DNA of 63,972 nt, the filler included, from Octopus bimaculoides (taxonomy: Eukaryota): the NCBI RefSeq assembly GCF_001194135.2. It is 7 parts of 7 records of this genome, joined end to end, with 100 filler letters (N's around TTAATTAATTAA, not from the genome) between each part and the next. Parts side by side here need not be neighbours in the genome. Positions count along the whole stretch, not along the records: positions 18,948 to 26,470 come from NC_068985.1; 6 more parts are not named here. One strand, 5' to 3'. Positions 18,948 through 26,263 of the stretch are shown piece by piece (positions within the stretch are counted from its first letter, which is position 1; the number at the start of each line of letters is the position of its first letter). A model generated the notes under the pieces. It was not told the origin of the DNA and did no database searches. It saw nothing but the letters and a program-made list of their open reading frames with translations. A program made the position numbers and the translations under genes.

Positions 18948-19149
18948 TATATATATATATATATATATATTTATTTATATATATAGTTATCGCCAAGCTA
19001 ACATGGCAGTCCAGAAGAATAGGACAAATGCTGCCATTGATTAGCTCCAAGAGGCCATCGCCTCTAGCTAGCTATGTGACACACGAACCTGCGTCCATTA
19101 TAACCTTCAAACAGAGGAGGTCAGCCACTTCCCCTTGCTGGTCTGGCAT

Positions 19150-19190
19150 CTACAGACTAGTTTCAGGGTATTTGCCCCTTATCAATGTAG
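19150..19190 (-). ncRNA. Type I hammerhead ribozyme motif, unit 1
   Basis: Minus strand 5'-CUACA UUGAUAA GGGG CAAAUA CCCU GAA ACUA GUC UGUAG-3': stem I CUACA/UGUAG, core U3-UGAU-A8-A, stem II 4 bp, GAAA, palindromic stem III ACUAGU, GUC cleavage triplet. Confidence 0.8.
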
Positions 19191-19510
19191 AGCACCCGAA
19201 CCAAACAGGCATCACTACTGACCGTCTGTTTGAAGGATTATTTACCTAAATTCAGTGGAATACATCCACTGGTTTTCAAAACTAGAAATATTAATATTTC
19301 TAAGTCTTTCTAAAGGAGTCTACGGTAGCGGTGCTGGATATTAATAGTTATCGCCAAGGTAACATGGCAGTCCAGAAAAATAGAACGAATGCTGTCATTG
19401 ATTAGCTCCAAGAGGCCATCGCCTCAAGCTAGTTATGCGACACATGAACCTGTGTCCATTATAACCTTCAAACAGGGGAGGTCAGCAGCTTCCCCTTGCT
19501 GGTTTGGCAT

Positions 19511-19550
19511 CTGCAGACTAGTTTCGGGGTATTGCCCTTTGTCAATGCAG
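19511..19550 (-). ncRNA. Type I hammerhead ribozyme motif, unit 2
   Basis: Minus strand 5'-CUGCA UUGACAA AGGG CAAUA CCCC GAA ACUA GUC UGCAG-3'. Stem I has a double compensatory change relative to unit 1. There is an A.C mismatch at the base of stem II. Confidence 0.75.
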
Positions 19551-19890
19551 AGCAGCCGAACCCAGCAGGCGTTGCTACTGACCGTCTGTACGAAGGTTAT
19601 TTATCTAATTTCAGTGGAATACATCCACTGGTTTTCAGAAATAGAGATATTAATATTTCTAAGTCTCTCTAAAGGAGACTACGGAAGCCGTACTGGATAT
19701 TAATAGTTATTGCCAAGCTAACATGGCAGTCCAGAAAAATAGGACGAATGCTGTCATTGATTAGCTCCAAGAGGCCATCGCCTCAAGCTAGTTGTGCGAC
19801 ACACGAACCTGTGTCCATTATAACCTTCAACAGGGGAGGTCCTAGGAGGTAATCAACAGCAGCATTTGTCCTATTTTTCTGTACTGCCAT

Positions 19891-20138
19891 TGCATTGTTG
19901 CTTTTATTGAACTCATAAAGCAAAATATGCTGAATACACTCCTTTGTCATTTCCATTATAACTTTGAAAAGACAACTGTTAAAATCAACTGCACTCTTCA
20001 AAACTTATACTAAGAATAAGTACAAGGTAAAACTACTACCCGCTTTTATAACAAGTAGATGCAGGTAGTTTATCCCATCTCCTTCCGACTTATAGTTCAT
20101 GCAATTATAAAAACTGCATTATTTATGGCATGACCCAA
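19891..20138 (-). mobile_element. mariner element 5' end: TIR, leader and first 22 codons of transposase
   Basis: Minus strand TA-TTGGGTCATGCCATAAATAATG... then ATG at 19956: MEMTKECIQHILLYEFNKSNNA, truncated at the junction with the hammerhead array. Confidence 0.8.
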
Positions 20139-20149
20139 TATATATGATG

Positions 20150-20570
20150 GGGTTCTTCCAATTTCCATCTACCAAATCCATTCACAAAGTTTTGTTCCAG
20201 CCCAGGACTATAGTAGAAGACCTTTAACTAAGGTGCTACACAGGGTAACAGAAACAAGAACCATGCAGTTGGGAAGCAAACTTCTCACCACAATGCCATG
20301 CTTGTACCCGTGTGTGTGTGTGGGTGTGTGTGTGTATTTATTTTAAATGTATGTATATGTATATGTGTGTTTGTCTTTGTGTTTTTCCCCATCACTAACC
20401 ATTTGACAGTGGCTGATTTGTTTACGGCTACATAACTTAGTGGTTCAGCAAAAGAGACTTAACAAAATAATAAGTGCTGGGGTTGGTTTGTTTCATTAAA
20501 ATTCTTTGAGACAGTGCCCCAGCATGGTCACAGTCCAATGACTGAAGCAAGTAATAGAAAACAAAAGATA
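20150..20570. mobile_element. Old family A modules in opposite orientation (head on -, 3' module on +)
   Basis: 20150-20310 is a reverse head; 20360-20570 is CCCCAGCATGGTCACAGTCCAATGACTGAAGCAAG. Confidence 0.7.
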
Positions 20571-20765: not shown

Positions 20766-20963
20766 TTCTTTTACTTGCATCAGTCTGCGGTCATGCTGGA
20801 GTAGCACCTTGAAGGGTTTTTAGTCAAATATATCAACCTCAGGATTTATTGTTTTTAAGCCTAGTACTTATTTTATCAGTTTCTTTTGCCAAACTGCTAA
20901 TTTCAGGGACATAAACACACCAACACCAGATGTCAAACATATAGATACATATGCACATACACA

Positions 20964-21035
<72 letters not shown>

Positions 21036-21322
21036 NNNNNNNNNNNNNNNNNNNNNNNNNNNNNNNNNNNNNNNNNNNNNNNNNNNNNNNNNNNNNNNNN
21101 NNNNNNNNNNNNNNNNNNNNNNNNNNNNNNNNNNNNNNNNNNNNNNNATATATATATATATATATAACAGGCTTCATTTAGTTTCTGTCTACTAAATCCA
21201 CTCACAAGACTTTAGTCAGTCTGAGGCTATAGTAGAAGACACTTGTACTTGGTGCCATACAGTGGGACTGAACCTGGAACCATGTGGGAAGCAAGCTTCT
21301 CACCACACAGCCATACCTGCAC
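20766..21322 (-). mobile_element. SINE family A (older variant), spans gap
   Basis: 3' module at 20766-20940 and head at 21165-21322. Confidence 0.8.
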
Positions 21323-21669
21323 TTAATTGTATATATTTTTTTTTGCAATGTTTCCATCATACTTTCTTAAACTTTATTAAGCCAATTAAAATGAAATTTT
21401 TTATATAAATCAAGAATAGATGTTCATCCTTGAGAATGTGTTGGGGTATAGCCTATAGTCAAAATGTGCGTATGTGCTTTAAAAAGGTTATGTTGCTTTT
21501 ATTTCTTACTCTAGTTTGATAAAGACTTCACTTGGAACACTAGTCTACTTCTTTTCTTTTTCCTTTTTTGGTATATAATTCACAGTGCACCACTTTTCAT
21601 ATTAATATTTTTCCTTGTGTTCACATTTTGTCTCCCACCTTTGAATTTTTATCAACCTGTTCTTACTTC

Positions 21670-22378
21670 TAACGTTGTCTAACCATTTGCCCCTGTCCCT
21701 TGTGTCGACTTCAGTTCCCTCTTCCACTTTGCTTTGCCGTGTCCATCAACAAGTCCCATGGCCAAACACTAACAACAACAGGCCACCATTTAGGCCAACC
21801 ATGCTTCTCACACAGCCAATTATATGTCAGATGTGCAAGAGTCAGATGCAAAAAAACTTTCCGTGCTTGCCAAAAGCCAAAACAAAAAATGTCATCTGCT
21901 GTGAGGTGCTGTAGGACATCCAACATACCACAGCTTTCCTACCGAACAGGTTTATGGTGAGTGAGTACTATTGTTGCCATTCTTTCAAAATTACCTGTTT
22001 TTCTTAAGTCTTTTTTAAAATTTTGTCTGTTACAGTTTCTCAATCTCCTTGCAGATGGCTGGAGTTTTGGCATCACTGCACCCACTGCTTTACATATGAA
22101 CGAAAAAGGATGTTTATACCTGTGAACATTTAACAATCCTTTTCAGGGCTATTGTGAGAATGATAACACAGCCCTTGTCCATGGCTTTTCCATGACTTTT
22201 CACCCTGTTGTTACTACTTTATTTATGGTCTATGGGAAAAATCACTTCTTCCTCAATGTCAATGTTTGCAACTTAACGCAAAAAATATTCAGAGATGTAC
22301 AACAAAAAAAAATGGGAGAACCTATTAAGACTATTGCCGAGTATTTAATACCCGAGCAACGCTGGGTACTCATGCTAG
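21670..22378 (+). mobile_element. Helitron 3' portion with PIF1 helicase C-terminal remnant and intact 3' terminus
   Basis: RLQFPLPLCFAVSINKSHGQTL...PCFSHSQLYVRCARV and (frameshifted) KTKNVICCEVL* at 21706-21914. Hairpin TACCCGAGC-AAC-GCTGGGTA followed by CTAG (22375-22378) then T. Confidence 0.85.
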
Positions 22379-22429: not shown

Positions 22430-22905
22430 AGCTCCTCCTCCTCCTCCCCCTCCTCCCACTCCTCTTTCATCTTCTTAACCTCCTCCTCCTCCTCCTTCTC
22501 TTTCTTCTTCTTCTTCTTCTTCTTCTTCTTCTCCCCCTCCTCCTTCTTTTTCTTCTTCTTCTTCTTCTCCTTCTTCTTCTTCTTTTTCTTCTTCTTCTTC
22601 TTCTTCTTCTTCTTCTTCTTCTTCTTCTTCTCCTTCTTCTTCTTCTTCTTCTTCTTCTTCTTCTTCTTCTNNNNNNNNNNNNNNNNNNNNNNNNNNNNNN
22701 NNNNNNNNNNNNNNNNNNNNNNNNNNNNNNNNNNNNNNNNNNNNNNNNNNNNNNNNNNNNNNNNNNNNNNNNNNNNNNNNNNNNNNNNNNTTCTTCTTCT
22801 TCTTCTTCTTCTTCTTCTTCTTCTTCTTCTTCTTCTTCTTCTTCTTCTTCTTCTTCTTCTCCCCCTCCTTCTTCTTCTTCTTCTTCTTCTTCTTCTTCTT
22901 CTTCC
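22430..22905. repeat. (CTT)n/(CCT)n microsatellite
   Basis: Read directly; spans a gap. Confidence 0.95.
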
Positions 22906-23394: not shown

Positions 23395-23702
23395 CTTATA
23401 CTTGTTCCAGTCATTGGACTATGGCCATCCTGGAGCACCACCTTGAAGGGTTTAGTCAAACAAATCAACTTCAGTACTTATTTTTTAAAGTCTTGTAATT
23501 AACCCATCGGTCTCTTTTGCTGAGCTGCTAAGTTACAGTGATTCAAACAACCCAACACTAGTTGTTTGCAATGGTGGGAACAAGCACAAACCCAAAGGCA
23601 TACTTACATCCATATATGTACAATGGGCTTACACACAGTTTCTGTCTATCAATCCATCACAAGGCATTGGTCAGCCCACAGCTATAGTAGAAGACACTTG
23701 CT
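23395..23702 (-). mobile_element. SINE family A, old diverged copy
   Basis: CTTGTTCCAGTCATTGGACTATGGCCATCCTGGAGCACC...GCTATAGTAGAAGACACTTGC. Confidence 0.75.
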
Positions 23703-23725
23703 CTTTGCCATCTTCTATTGTACTA

Positions 23726-24137
23726 TACTCTTTTACTCTTTTACTTGTTTCAGTCATTTGACTGTGGCCATGCTGGAGCACTGCCTTTAGTCGAGGAAAT
23801 TGACCCCAGGACTTATTCTTTGTAAGCCTAGTACTTATTCTATCGGTCTCTTTTTGCCAAACCGCTAAGTTACGGGGGACGTAAACACACCAGCATCGGT
23901 TGTCAAGCGATGGTGGGGGGACAAATACAGACACACAAACACACATACATATATATATATATACATATATACGACGGGCTTCTTTCAGTTTCTGTCTACC
24001 AAATCCACTCACAAGCCTTTGGTCGGCCCGAGGCTATAGTAGAAGACACTTGCCCAAAGTGCCATGCAGTGGGACTGAACCCGGAACCATGTGGTTGGTA
24101 AGCAAGCTACTTACCACACAACCACTCCTGCGCCTAT
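23726..24137 (-). mobile_element. SINE family A, full-length young copy (~412 bp)
   Basis: Reverse strand from ATAGGCGCAGGAGTGG head to (GAGTAAAA)n tail. Confidence 0.95.
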
Positions 24138-24782
24138 TTATACTTCCAAAGTCATTTTGTAATAGCAGCTTGGTAAACATCTTGCTCACTTTTTCCTTTC
24201 CATAACTACTTTTCTCCAGAATCCACAGGAATTCAAAAAGAACTACACAAACTTCACCTAAATGTACTTTCTTCCAAACTGTATGAATCAAAGAATTTTT
24301 TCACCATGGCTTTCTATTCCTCACATTTATAATACCATTTTCATTATTCTAGTTGCCAACAAGATGGTGAGCTGGCAGAATTTGTCAGCATGTGGGACAA
24401 AAATGCTTAGAAGCATTCTTTTGATTTTCACTTCCTGGATTGAAATACTACCCAAGTCAACTTGTAACAAGTGTTACAGAGAACTTACCACCTATGCCTT
24501 CATTCTATCATTGGTTGACCTAAGGCTAAAGTAGAAGACACTTGCCCAAGGTATCACACAGTGGGTCTGAATCCAGAACCATGTGGTTGGTAAGCAAGCT
24601 ACTTACCACACAGCTATGCTTGCACCTATATATTAGGTTGTTTCACATGAAATGTTGCAATTTTAATTACTTGTTATTTCAGTCATTTAAAAATCCAATT
24701 ATGTATACCATGTATTTTATCTTGACTGTTTTCTTTCCCAACAATATTGGTATACAAAATTTGTACCCACGGCCTTTTGAAA

Positions 24783-25478
24783 ATGATAACAACCAAACTA
24801 TGTTGAGTGATTTTCTCATATAAGTACAAACTGGGTCACTCTGCCACAAAAGGTGTATGGAATATCAAGCGGGCCTTTGGTAATAGTTTTGTTGACATCC
24901 AAACTGTTCAGAGATGGTTCCAAAGCTCTCGTTCAGGTGATGATAGCCTTGAAAATAAACCAAGGAGTAGGCCAAAATCAGTTATTTGACATGATGGATT
25001 AAATTCTTTGGTTGAACAAAATCTGAGAACAAAGGTTTGAAAACTTTTATCAGAACTCCAAATATCTCACACAACTGTTTTGGGACACCTGTATAAAATT
25101 GAAAAAAATCAAGAGAATAAATAGGTTTATTCCACATCAACTGAATGAGATTTAAAACAACAGACAGACCCAAAGTGTGCTCCTTATTGCTTTCTCGACT
25201 GGAAAAAGACCATTTTTGCATCAAATCATTACTTGTGATGAGAAATGGATACTCTTTGACAACAACAGAACAGGACAGTGATTAGATGCAGGAGAGTCAC
25301 CTAAACCCACCATTGCACTACCCAAATCCACCATTGCACCCTAAAAAGTTAGTGGTCACTGTATGGTGGTCTGCGAAAGGAGTTATTCATTATTCATTCT
25401 TACAACAAGGAAAAACGGTAACAGCAACATCATATCGACAGGAAATTGATTGTATGCATGAGAATTTGAAAATGAAGG
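24783..25478 (+). pseudogene. mariner transposase relic (stops and frameshifts, 3'-truncated)
   Basis: IFSYKYKLGHSATKGVWNIKRAFG...TVQRWFQ..RSGDDSLENKPRS, FIPHQLNE (WVPHEL-like), IITCDEKWILFDN, LHPKKLVVTVWWSAKGVIHYSFLQQGKTVTA. Confidence 0.9.
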
Positions 25479-25579
25479 TCAAAGGAAGAATTTATAGTAA
25501 GAATTTTGATAGGAGTGGCTGCCTGTTGTGTGTCTACCTACACATGTGCGAAGGAGAATGGTCAGTAGAAAGGTACTGT

Positions 25580-26170
25580 TAGTTTGAAGTATGTGTGTGT
25601 ACGTATATGTATATGTAGTGTGTGTGTGTGTGTGTGTGTTTTGTTTCCAGTGTACGTGTGTGTACGTTTGGGTATGTATGTATGTATGTATGTATGTATG
25701 TATGTATGTATGTGTGTGTACGTGTGGGTATGTATATATGTGTGTGTACGTGTGGGTATGTGTGTGCGCGTGAGGTTGTGTCTGTGGAGTAATTGTGCTA
25801 TACTCTGTGTGTGTGTGCTTGTATGTGTGTGTGTGTGTGTGTACATGTATGTATAATTGTGTGCGTGTATGTATGAGTGTGTGCTGTGTGTGTATAAGAG
25901 GTATGTGTGGGTTCATCTGCGTGTGTGCGTATGTGTGTGCGTGAGTATATGTGTGTGTGCGTGTGTACATGTGTGTGTATGTGCGTGTGTATTTTGTGTG
26001 TGTGCATGTGCCTGTGTGTTTGTGCATGTGTGTGTGAACGAGGGGTTGTGTAGGAAGTATAGGTGCGTTTTTTGCGAGTGTATGCATGTGCGTGTGTGTG
26101 TGTACGTGTGTATGTGTATGTGCGTGTAGTTGTGTGAGTGTATGTGCGCGTGTGTATGTGTGTGCGTATC
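25580..26170. repeat. TG-rich low-complexity tract with conserved non-microsatellite islands shared with 63340-63972
   Basis: For example GTGAACGAGGGGTTGTGTAGGAAGTATAGGTGC (26033) vs GTGAACAAGGGGTTGTGTAGGGAGGTATATGTGC (63438). Confidence 0.6.
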
Positions 26171-26263
26171 AAAATTAATCAAAGAACACCCCTAGTATAT
26201 CTACCTGCTGGAACTCTTATTTCCAGCAGGTAGACATACTTAGTATGTCCTTTGATTAATTTT
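26171..26263. repeat. ~93-bp inverted repeat (hairpin)
   Basis: AAAATTAATCAAAGAACACCCCTAGTATATCTACCTGCTGGAA-ctcttat-TTCCAGCAGGTAGACATACTTAGTATGTCCTTTGATTAATTTT. Confidence 0.9.

What the first reader, a model, noticed from the sequence alone, without database searches (positions are those of the whole stretch)
19150..19550. Two tandem hammerhead ribozyme folds with a U3-A8 core and covarying stem I on the minus strand
Seen: unit 1 reads CUACA-UUGAUAA-GGGG-CAAAUA-CCCU-GAA-ACUA-GUC-UGUAG and unit 2 reads CUGCA-UUGACAA-AGGG-CAAUA-CCCC-GAA-ACUA-GUC-UGCAG. Both halves of one stem I pair change together between copies (A-U to G-C). The canonical C3/G8 of CUGANGA are both replaced (U3/A8), preserving the 3-8 Watson-Crick pair. 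Stem I extends to 6 bp, then an internal loop, then GGUUCGG/CCA(G/A)ACC. Known: 3-8 is a covarying pair in natural hammerheads. CAAAUA is the loop II of the Schistosoma Sm-alpha hammerhead, which docks on an internal loop of stem I. Inference: these are extended type I hammerheads from a family with a non-canonical core that a CUGANGA pattern search would miss. Each copy has one defect at pair 10.1-11.1 (G.U in unit 1, A.C in unit 2), so these copies may be slower than the family consensus GGGG/CCCC.
Basis: partly seen in the sequence, partly recalled or inferred. Interest (0 to 1): 0.9.

Follow-up and report, generated by a model that had tools for sequence, protein, structure and literature searches.

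The report
Octopus hammerhead-ribozyme tandem repeat (retrozyme)
The two motifs are real hammerhead self-cleaving RNA folds sitting once per unit in a 359-bp tandem repeat of an octopus genome, which is the known "retrozyme" kind of mobile element, here with a rare but already documented U3-A8 core that standard ribozyme searches miss.

Summary
On the minus strand, 19190-19150 and 19550-19511 fold as type I hammerheads. The core is intact except for C3/G8, which are replaced by the Watson-Crick pair U3/A8. The predicted cuts are at 19155/19154 and 19516/19515.

The motifs lie 361 nt apart, one per unit, in a 359-bp tandem repeat (18983-19841, 2.4 units, 91% identical, 44.5% GC). The surrounding DNA is transposon-rich and octopus-like. 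This is the architecture of metazoan non-LTR retrozymes, the same kind of hammerhead-bearing repeat as the newt "satellite 2".

- Helix I has 6 bp plus a distal stem.
- Helix II has 4 bp, with loop CAAAUA.
- Helix III is the 2-bp palindrome ACUAGU, which implies action as a double hammerhead.

A third, partial copy on an Octopus vulgaris chromosome has the same U3-A8 core, so the source RNA carried it.

Rfam finds nothing, even at E ≤ 10. Natural U3-A8 hammerheads were reported in 2011 and 2014. Covariation rests on one compensatory pair in three sequences and cannot be tested statistically. None of the three copies has the canonical G10.1-C11.1 pair. Cleavage is untested.

Verdict: a new member of a known kind, of moderate to low interest.

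The parts
18983..19841 (-). Tandem array of a 359-bp unit, 2.4 copies (units C 19841-19483, B 19482-19124, partial A 19123-18983). It is 44.5% GC and has no protein-family match. It is interpreted as a non-LTR retrozyme insertion.
   Evidence: TRF gives period 359, 2.4 copies and 91% matches. Unit alignment. GC content. The longest ORF has no Pfam hit.
19140..19202 (-). Extended hammerhead of unit B: GGUUCGG-GUGC-UCUACA UUGAUAA GGGG CAAAUA CCCU GAA ACUAGU C | UGUAGA-UG-CCAGACC. It has U3-A8 and G10.1.U11.1. The minimal motif is 19150-19190.
19501..19562 (-). Extended hammerhead of unit C: GGUUCGG-CUGC-UCUGCA UUGACAA AGGG CAAUA CCCC GAA ACUAGU C | UGCAGA-UG-CCAAACC. It has U3-A8. Position 10.1-11.1 is either an A.C mismatch or, in another register, a bulged A followed by G10.1-C11.1 with a 3-bp helix II. 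The minimal motif is 19511-19550.
19154..19155 (-). Predicted self-cleavage site of unit B, 3' of C17 (19155) and before U1.1 (19154).
   Evidence: Position of GUC in the pattern match. The cleavage itself is inferred, not shown.
19515..19516 (-). Predicted self-cleavage site of unit C, 3' of C17 (19516). The cleavage-to-cleavage monomer 19515->19155 is 361 nt.
   Evidence: The monomer folds with MFE -115.3 kcal/mol and z = -4.28 against shuffles, and its ends are joined through helix I.
19842..19890 (+). 49-nt inverted copy of an internal segment of the unit (equivalent to 19723-19771). It abuts the upstream (RNA 5') end of the array.
   Evidence: Inverted repeats I1-I3, 84-88% complementary. 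The homology does not extend further. Inverted 5'-truncated copies at the upstream end are described for Penelope-like element insertions (PMC8557442).
18948..18985 (.). (TA)n microsatellite directly following the RNA 3' end of the array (...GGCGATAACTAT|ATATAT...). It is probably the insertion target. The piece is cut here.
   Evidence: TRF and sequence. A (TA)n target preference of some Penelope-like elements is reported in PMC8557442.

Best explanation
This is an insertion of a cephalopod (Octopus) non-LTR retrozyme. A retrozyme is a non-coding tandem repeat, here with a unit of about 360 bp, whose minus-strand transcript carries one type I hammerhead ribozyme per unit.

Proposed mechanism:
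1. Multimeric transcripts fold their hammerheads. Helix III is only the 2-bp palindrome ACUAGU, so two neighbouring hammerheads most likely pair into a double hammerhead with a 6-bp intermolecular helix III.
2. The RNA cuts itself after GUC. [quoted passage not shown]
3. The ends of each monomer are held together by helix I. A host RNA ligase can then circularise them.
4. The circles, or the multimers, serve as templates for a reverse transcriptase supplied in trans, probably by a Penelope-like element. That enzyme primes at a fixed TA-rich site of the RNA on TA-rich target DNA and lays down tandem cDNA copies.

The catalytic core uses the U3-A8 Watson-Crick pair in place of C3-G8.

Shown here: the motif, the repeat, the structured monomer, a second dispersed copy with the same core and the same 3' end, and the failure of Rfam to see it.

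Inferred: cleavage, dimeric action, circularisation and mobilisation by a Penelope-like element. The copies in this window are old (units 91% identical) and carry non-canonical 10.1-11.1 positions, so they may be weak or dead relics of an active source.
For: Motif:
- The descriptor scan finds 2 sites against 0.001 per shuffle.
- 98% of cells pair in the proposed structure, against 32-51% when partners are slid. There is one compensatory pair (A-U/G-C) and one compatible change (U-G/U-A).

Repeat and monomer:
- The 359-bp tandem repeat has one hammerhead per unit, 2.4 units and 44.5% GC.
- The monomer RNA is strongly self-paired, z = -4.28.
- Co-folding two copies yields the intermolecular ACUAGU:ACUAGU helix, -47.2 kcal/mol against -40.8 for two monomers.

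Host and second copy:
- The antisense ORF hits only an Octopus vulgaris protein.
- Its locus L001 carries a 235-bp partial copy, 89-93% identical, with the same U3-A8 core. It has the same RNA 3' end (...GATAACTAT(TAATAT)) and a different 5' end.

Insertion marks: (TA)n at the 3' end and a 49-nt inverted fragment at the 5' end.

Literature:
- Metazoan type I hammerheads lie in tandem repeats of 150-450 bp with low GC. These repeats are expressed as self-paired circRNAs of 170-400 nt (PMC7229834).
- Canonical metazoan helices are 6 bp, 4 bp and 1-2 bp with a palindromic loop, and the motifs act as dimers (PMC4209133).
- U3-A8 covaries in nature, and such cores were already shown to be active in vitro (PMC3088659).
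Against: - No Rfam hammerhead model matches, even at E <= 10 on 521 nt.
- None of the three copies has the highly conserved G10.1-C11.1 pair in the simplest register (G.U twice, A.C once).
- The L001 copy has lost one A of GAAA.
- Only three hammerhead copies could be collected, so covariation is not statistically testable.
- The hammerhead region is no better conserved between units B and C than the rest of the unit: 10 differences in 71 nt against 91% overall.
- There is no evidence here for transcription, cleavage or circles.
- No reverse transcriptase or GIY-YIG ORF was found in the piece to link it to a Penelope-like element.
Confidence: 0.75

Rival explanations
1. The motif descends from a hammerhead, but the whole U3-A8 lineage is catalytically dead. 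On this reading the repeat is an ordinary satellite or decayed repeat. It spread by DNA-level processes such as unequal crossing-over or segmental duplication, and the hammerhead-like fold has no present function.
For: Non-canonical 10.1-11.1 in all three copies. A core deletion in the L001 copy. The hammerhead segment is not more conserved than the rest of the unit. No Rfam hit.
Against: Two core substitutions that together preserve the 3-8 Watson-Crick pair are present in both independent insertions. This is what selection on an active core would leave. U3-A8 cores are reported to be active in vitro and to occur naturally (PMC3088659). The two insertions share a 3' end but not a 5' end, and one is only 0.65 unit long. 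That pattern fits reverse transcription from a defined priming site better than DNA-level duplication. All other core positions are intact in both window copies.
Confidence: 0.15
2. The repeat is the terminal repeat (pLTR) region of an autonomous Penelope-like element, or a tandem remnant of one. It would then not be a separate non-autonomous retrozyme family.
For: Penelope-like elements carry type I hammerheads in their pLTRs. They insert in partial tandems, often with an inverted 5'-truncated copy upstream, and some prefer (TA)n (PMC4209133; PMC8557442). U3-A8 was first seen in bulk in PLE hammerheads. Retrozymes are reported as relatives of pLTRs (bioRxiv 10.64898/2026.07.22.740005).
Against: No reverse transcriptase or GIY-YIG match appears in any ORF of the piece. 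The 2.4 units follow each other directly with no ORF between them. The array ends in (TA)n. The hammerhead is of the canonical extended kind, with loops and helix III, and not the minimal PLE kind.
Confidence: 0.08
3. Chance resemblance: a tandem repeat that happens to contain a string fitting a relaxed hammerhead descriptor.
For: The relaxed descriptor would give a few hundred chance hits in a genome of this size, extrapolating. A looser version finds a solitary canonical-core motif in L001 at a rate expected in 5.6% of shuffles. Rfam is negative.
Against: Beyond the descriptor, the motif has a 6-bp helix I continued by a distal stem and a loop II identical to a known high-activity hammerhead. 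It also has a palindromic helix III, one motif per unit of a repeat of the right size and GC content, a self-paired monomer and a compensatory change. These features were not part of the search.
Confidence: 0.02

Closest known systems
Metazoan non-LTR retrozymes (Cervera & de la Pena 2020, PMC7229834), for example those of the mussel Mytilus galloprovincialis and the coral Acropora millepora
   Same: Type I hammerhead, one per unit, in short tandem repeats (150-450 bp). GC is low, there is no LTR/PBS/PPT and no coding capacity. The monomer RNA is highly self-paired, and copies are dispersed in the genome.
   Different: The core is U3-A8 rather than C3-G8. Position 10.1-11.1 is not G-C in the copies seen. 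The host is a cephalopod, and no paper found here reports retrozymes or hammerheads in cephalopods. Rfam does not detect it. Expression and circles are untested.
Newt satellite 2 and axolotl HHR_Amex retrozymes (units of about 330-350 bp)
   Same: Similar unit size. Helix III is very weak with a palindromic sequence, so that efficient cleavage needs a double hammerhead formed by two units (PMC7229834; Forster et al. 1988, cited).
   Different: The amphibian motifs have the canonical CUGANGA core, and their copy number is enormous. The octopus copy number is unknown.
Schistosoma Sm-alpha hammerhead (the extended hammerhead crystallised in 2006)
   Same: 6-bp proximal helix I followed by an internal loop and a distal stem. 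Helix II has 4 bp. Loop II is the identical CAAAUA (sequence GUCC-CAAAUA-GGAC seen; its Schistosoma origin is from my own knowledge).
   Different: It has C3-G8 and G10.1-C11.1. The internal-loop nucleotides of stem I differ, and the repeat family is different.
U3-A8 hammerhead variants: Cercyon Penelope-like element min-HHRs of Schistosoma mansoni (about 1,300 hits; PMC4209133) and the natural examples of Perreault et al. 2011 (PMC3088659)
   Same: The same compensated exchange of the 3-8 core pair in naturally occurring hammerheads.
   Different: The PLE motifs are minimal (no loops, little or no helix III) and lie in the terminal repeats of an autonomous element, mostly as single motifs. 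Here the variant core sits in a canonical extended type I fold inside a tandem retrozyme-like repeat.

Membership tests
Hammerhead ribozyme, type I | Conserved core C3 U4 G5 A6 N7 G8 A9 ... G12 A13 A14 ... A15.1-U16.1, H17 | tested here: inconclusive
   All positions match in both window copies except C3->U and G8->A, which together keep the 3-8 Watson-Crick pair. This exchange is a documented natural covariation. The strict consensus is therefore not met, but the known variant consensus is.
Hammerhead ribozyme, type I | Three helices around the core, with helix I open (5' and 3' ends in helix I) | tested here: met
   Helix I has 6 bp plus a 6-bp distal stem, helix II has 4 bp and helix III has 2 bp. 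98% of cells are paired across three copies, against 32-51% for slid partners.
Hammerhead ribozyme, type I | G10.1-C11.1 base pair | tested here: not met
   G.U in unit B and in L001, and A.C in unit C. Unit C meets it only in an alternative register with a bulged A after A9.
Hammerhead ribozyme, type I | Match to the curated covariance models (Rfam Hammerhead_1 and related models) | tested here: not met
   No hammerhead match at E <= 10 on the 7.5-kb piece or on 521 nt around the motifs. None at gathering score on L001.
Hammerhead ribozyme, type I | Covariation supporting the helices across family members | tested here: inconclusive
   One compensatory pair (A-U/G-C in helix I) and one G-U/A-U change among three sequences. 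The shuffle control is uninformative at this depth. No further copies could be fetched.
Hammerhead ribozyme, type I | Site-specific self-cleavage after H17 giving 2',3'-cyclic phosphate and 5'-OH ends | not testable with these tools
   This needs in vitro transcription or RNA-end mapping.
Metazoan non-LTR retrozyme | Tandem repeat of 150-450 bp with at least two consecutive units carrying a complete type I hammerhead | tested here: met
   359-bp unit, 2.4 copies, with hammerheads in two consecutive units. Definitions are in PMC7229834 and bioRxiv 10.64898/2026.07.22.740005. It is met only if the U3-A8 core is accepted.
Metazoan non-LTR retrozyme | Low GC (<45-50%), non-coding, no LTR/PBS/PPT | tested here: met
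   GC is 44.5%. The longest ORF (antisense, 104 aa) matches no Pfam family. PBS and PPT were not searched for specifically.
Metazoan non-LTR retrozyme | Highly self-paired unit-length RNA | tested here: met
   For the 361-nt monomer, MFE is -115.3 kcal/mol against -91.7 +/- 5.5 for shuffles, z = -4.28.
Metazoan non-LTR retrozyme | Dispersed copies in the genome (mobility) | tested here: inconclusive
   One further partial copy at an unrelated locus of Octopus vulgaris chromosome OX597823.1, with the same 3' end. Copy number is unknown.
Metazoan non-LTR retrozyme | Expression as linear and circular unit-length RNAs | not testable with these tools
   No transcriptome data are reachable here.
Penelope-like element (pLTR hammerhead) | Repeats flanking an ORF with a reverse transcriptase and usually a GIY-YIG endonuclease | tested here: not met
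   No RT or GIY-YIG match in 16 ORFs of the piece. The units are directly adjacent. The piece is cut 35 nt beyond the array on one side.

The most novel reading that the evidence does not exclude
Octopus (perhaps cephalopods generally) may harbour an active retrozyme family whose working hammerhead core is U3-A8, possibly with G10.1.U11.1 as well. It would produce abundant circular RNAs of about 361 nt. Because Rfam models and CUGANGA-based descriptors cannot see it, the census of hammerheads and retrozymes in animal genomes would be systematically incomplete for such compensated-core families.
Probability: 0.4. Interest if true: 0.5.

Novelty: new member of a known kind. Interest (0 to 1): 0.3.

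Why it matters
If the family is active, it adds cephalopods to the animals that make ribozyme-derived circular RNAs. It would also give a natural, tertiary-stabilised hammerhead with a U3-A8 core, and perhaps a G.U at 10.1-11.1, for mechanistic comparison with the canonical core.

It also exposes a practical blind spot. The curated covariance models return nothing for this motif even at very permissive thresholds. Surveys that rely on them, or on the CUGANGA box, will undercount hammerheads.

The shared 3' end of two insertions, the (TA)n target and the inverted upstream fragment give a testable hint on how such elements integrate, namely by Penelope-like machinery priming at a fixed site of a circular or multimeric RNA.

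Tried and rejected
1. Rfam cmscan in permissive mode on the piece and on 521 nt around the motifs, and in gathering mode on L001. No hammerhead hit. The sub-threshold miRNA and snoRNA hits in the piece are microsatellite or hairpin artefacts.

2. Collecting more copies with the DNA pattern TTGAYAANNNNCAAN{0,1}TANNNNGAAACTAGTC. It gave 0 matches in viral, metagenome and prokaryotic genome contigs.

3. A conserved 20-mer of the unit gave 24 metagenome matches. All are 20-23-nt chance identities in GC-rich bacterial contigs and were rejected.

4. The protein route, using the long antisense ORF. It gave a single hit, an Octopus vulgaris hypothetical protein, in both the word-indexed search and the exhaustive search. 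This yielded one extra locus. No tool here can search eukaryotic genomes by DNA, so a family consensus and R-scape-type statistics were out of reach.

5. The idea that the 49-nt inverted segment is mariner coding sequence captured by the repeat. The weak HTH_48 match (E 0.01, below Pfam's cut-off) ends about 5 residues into the segment. It lacks the conserved second half of the domain. There is no similarity to the other mariner remnant in the piece, and the homology to the unit is a sharp 49-nt block. I therefore read it as an inverted retrozyme fragment inserted next to a mariner remnant. This is not proven.

6. A tRNA scan for SINE heads found none.

7. A hammerhead on the plus strand: none found by the descriptor.

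8. Literature searches for hammerheads or retrozymes in cephalopods, and for an octopus satellite of this kind, found nothing specific.

9. The paper of Przybilski & Hammann 2007 on 3-8 exchanges is not held. Its content is cited only through PMC3884650 and PMC3088659.

Full report
**Observation.**
- Unit B, 19190-19150: CUACA UUGAUAA GGGG CAAAUA CCCU GAA ACUAGUC UGUAG.
- Unit C, 19550-19511: CUGCA UUGACAA AGGG CAAUA CCCC GAA ACUAGUC UGCAG.

C17 lies at 19155 and at 19516, so the predicted cuts at 19155/19154 and 19516/19515 are correctly placed. Free-energy folding of the 70-71-nt segments recovers helix I, its distal continuation and helix II. A 2-bp helix III with a 2-nt loop cannot be scored by the energy model.

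A type I descriptor of my own accepted C3-G8 or U3-A8, a 5-bp helix I, a 3-6-bp helix II with at most one mismatch, GAA, a helix III of at least 2 bp bounded by A15.1 and U16.1, and H17. It finds these two sites and nothing else in the piece. It finds 0.001 sites per dinucleotide shuffle, with 2 of 2000 shuffles giving a hit. The two sites are copies of one another, so this is one event. At that rate a genome of this size would contain some hundreds of chance matches to the bare descriptor, so context matters.

Tandem Repeats Finder shows a 359-bp unit repeated 2.4 times at 18983-19841, with 91% matches (alignment). Each full unit carries one hammerhead, and the two cleavage sites are 361 nt apart. 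The array is 44.5% GC.

The rest of the piece is animal repetitive DNA:
- TG, TA and TTC microsatellites.
- Mariner remnants: HTH_48 at E 9e-8 and Transposase_1 at E 2e-18.
- A Helitron helicase remnant, matching Helraiser at E 4.5e-9.
- Interspersed repeats.

The long ORF antisense to the hammerhead matches a single database protein, a 'hypothetical predicted protein' of Octopus vulgaris. Identity is 84% in the word-indexed search and 81% in the exhaustive search of 1.84 billion representatives. The locus encoding that protein is L001, on chromosome OX597823.1. It shares the window's interspersed repeats at 72-92% identity. The window therefore comes from an octopus or a close relative.

**A third copy.** L001 holds a 235-bp partial copy of the unit on its minus strand (10177-9944). 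It covers unit positions 278-359 and then 1-151, and is 89-93% identical. Its hammerhead reads CUGCA UUGAUAA GGGG CAAAUA CCCU GA-ACUAGUC UGCAG. This means:
- The same U3-A8 core.
- The same G.U at 10.1-11.1 as unit B.
- The G-C version of the variable helix I pair.
- One A of GAAA lost.

U3-A8 needs two substitutions relative to the canonical core. It is present in both independent insertions, so the source RNA already carried it. It is not a private decay product of this locus.

**Structure across the three copies.** 98% of cells form standard pairs in the proposed structure, against 32-51% when partners are slid by 1-3 columns. There is one compensatory change (A-U/G-C in helix I) and one compatible change (U-G/U-A in the distal stem). 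With three sequences the shuffle control is uninformative, so covariation is suggestive only.

Between units B and C the 71-nt hammerhead segment has 10 differences. It is thus no better conserved than the whole unit. The differences fall on tolerant positions: N7, loops, compensated or wobble pairs, and 10.1/11.1.

**How it compares with known hammerheads.** Canonical metazoan type I hammerheads are described as follows. Helix I has 6 bp and helix II has 4 bp, and they interact through loop nucleotides. Helix III has 1-2 bp capped by a small palindromic loop. That makes the monomer unstable and favours an active dimer in tandem repeats (PMC4209133).

The octopus motif has exactly these dimensions. 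Its ACUAGU is a 6-nt palindrome. Co-folding two unit-B copies gives the intermolecular ACUAGU:ACUAGU helix at -47.2 kcal/mol, against -40.8 for two separate monomers. Loop II, CAAAUA, equals the loop of the widely used extended hammerhead GUCC-CAAAUA-GGAC.

The U3-A8 exchange is documented. [quoted passage not shown] Cervera and de la Pena retrieved about 1,300 U3-A8 minimal hammerheads from Schistosoma mansoni, the variant having first turned up in the Penelope-like element Cercyon (PMC4209133).

**What kind of element it is.** Cervera and de la Pena (PMC7229834) showed the following for most classical animal type I hammerheads:
- They sit in short tandem repeats (150-450 bp) with GC below 45-50% and no LTR/PBS/PPT.
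- These are non-autonomous 'non-LTR retrozymes'.
- They are transcribed as multimers and self-cleaved to monomers of 170-400 nt.
- The monomers are circularised, most likely by a tRNA ligase, into highly self-paired circRNAs.
- They are probably mobilised by Penelope-like elements.

A 2026 preprint defines an active retrozyme operationally as a tandem repeat with at least two consecutive units carrying complete hammerheads. It places retrozymes next to PLE terminal repeats phylogenetically.

The octopus array meets the size, GC, two-unit and non-coding criteria. Its cleavage-to-cleavage monomer is strongly structured (MFE -115.3 kcal/mol, z = -4.28), with the ends joined by helix I.

**Insertion marks.** The window array and the L001 copy end at the same unit position on the RNA 3' side (...GGCGATAACTAT, followed by TAATAT in L001 and by (TA)n in the window). 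Their 5' ends differ: the array is 2.4 units long and the L001 copy is 0.65 unit. Neither end coincides with the hammerhead cut.

I infer that the cDNA was made from a circular or multimeric template, primed at a fixed TA-rich site, with variable 5' extent.

A 49-nt inverted copy of an internal unit segment abuts the upstream end of the array (19842-19890). PLE insertions are described as often carrying an inverted 5'-truncated copy upstream, and some clades prefer (TA)n targets (PMC8557442). These marks fit mobilisation by PLE machinery but do not prove it. No RT or GIY-YIG ORF is present in the piece.

**Evidence against, and limits.**
- Rfam 15 returns no hammerhead match for the piece at E <= 10, nor for the 521 nt around the motifs. 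My inference is that the two changed invariant positions, the 2-bp helix III and the non-canonical 10.1-11.1 pair together sink the score.
- None of the three copies shows G10.1-C11.1 in the simplest register. C11.1-G12 is a CpG in DNA, so C-to-T decay could explain U11.1. But its presence in two independent insertions leaves open that G.U is the family state.
- Unit C can alternatively be read with a bulged A after A9, G10.1-C11.1 and a 3-bp helix II. That feature is reminiscent of PLE hammerheads.
- I could not collect more copies. Pattern scans of the viral, metagenome and prokaryote collections found nothing related, and no tool here searches eukaryotic genomes by DNA.

**Verdict.** The finding is a genuine hammerhead-bearing tandem repeat of the retrozyme kind in an octopus genome, with the already known U3-A8 core variant. 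I put 0.75 on this reading. I put 0.15 on a catalytically dead relic lineage, 0.08 on a PLE terminal-repeat remnant and 0.02 on chance.

It is a new member of a known kind. I found no report of hammerheads or retrozymes in cephalopods, and the combination of a canonical extended fold with a U3-A8 core in a retrozyme is modestly unusual. A specialist would not be surprised. The most useful practical point is that standard models miss it.

Noticed in passing
window 19842-19890 (and 19891-19941 on the minus strand): A 49-nt inverted copy of an internal segment of the repeat unit sits directly against the upstream end of the array. Next to it is a weak mariner HTH_48-like ORF start (E 0.01, below Pfam's cut-off). 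The array may have landed inside a mariner remnant, with a Penelope-style inverted partial copy.
   Followed up: partly
L001 10001-10534 (+), protein P0001: The only database relative of the repeat is an annotated Octopus vulgaris 'hypothetical predicted protein' of 177 aa. Its first ~64 residues are the antisense translation of a retrozyme fragment, including the hammerhead. This is probably a gene-prediction artefact on a repeat.
   Followed up: partly
L001 18395-18433 (-): A solitary motif with a canonical core, UUUG CUGAUGA GGUC CAAUAA UACU GAA AUGUGU C CAAA. It fits a loosened hammerhead descriptor and is not in a tandem repeat. Shuffles of L001 give such a hit 5.6% of the time, so it may be chance or a degenerate solo hammerhead.
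   Followed up: partly
window 21700-21960 (+): ORF fragment matching the C-terminal helicase part of the Helitron transposase Helraiser (E 4.5e-9) and PIF1 helicases. It is a Helitron remnant.
   Followed up: yes
window 24807-24989 and 25286-25582 (+): Decayed mariner-type transposase: HTH_48 (E 9e-8) and the partial DDE domain Transposase_1 (E 1.7e-18), broken by stops or frameshifts.
   Followed up: yes
window 20138-20315, 20778-21334, 23395-24141, 24511-24633: Several copies of an interspersed repeat of about 400 bp that contains or abuts (CA)n/(TA)n microsatellites. It is also present three times in the Octopus vulgaris locus L001 at 72-92% identity. ARAGORN sees no tRNA in it. From memory it resembles an octopus SINE.
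   Followed up: partly
window 26174-26260: A near-perfect hairpin of about 87 nt, palindromic on both strands. It gives sub-threshold matches to unrelated miRNA families (38 bits against a gathering score of 90). It is probably a small inverted-repeat element and not a miRNA.
   Followed up: no
window 21036-21147 and 22671-22790: Two runs of N (112 and 120 nt) inside the microsatellites (CA)n/(TA)n and (TTC)n. They are assembly gaps or masked stretches, so repeat lengths there are unknown.
   Followed up: no
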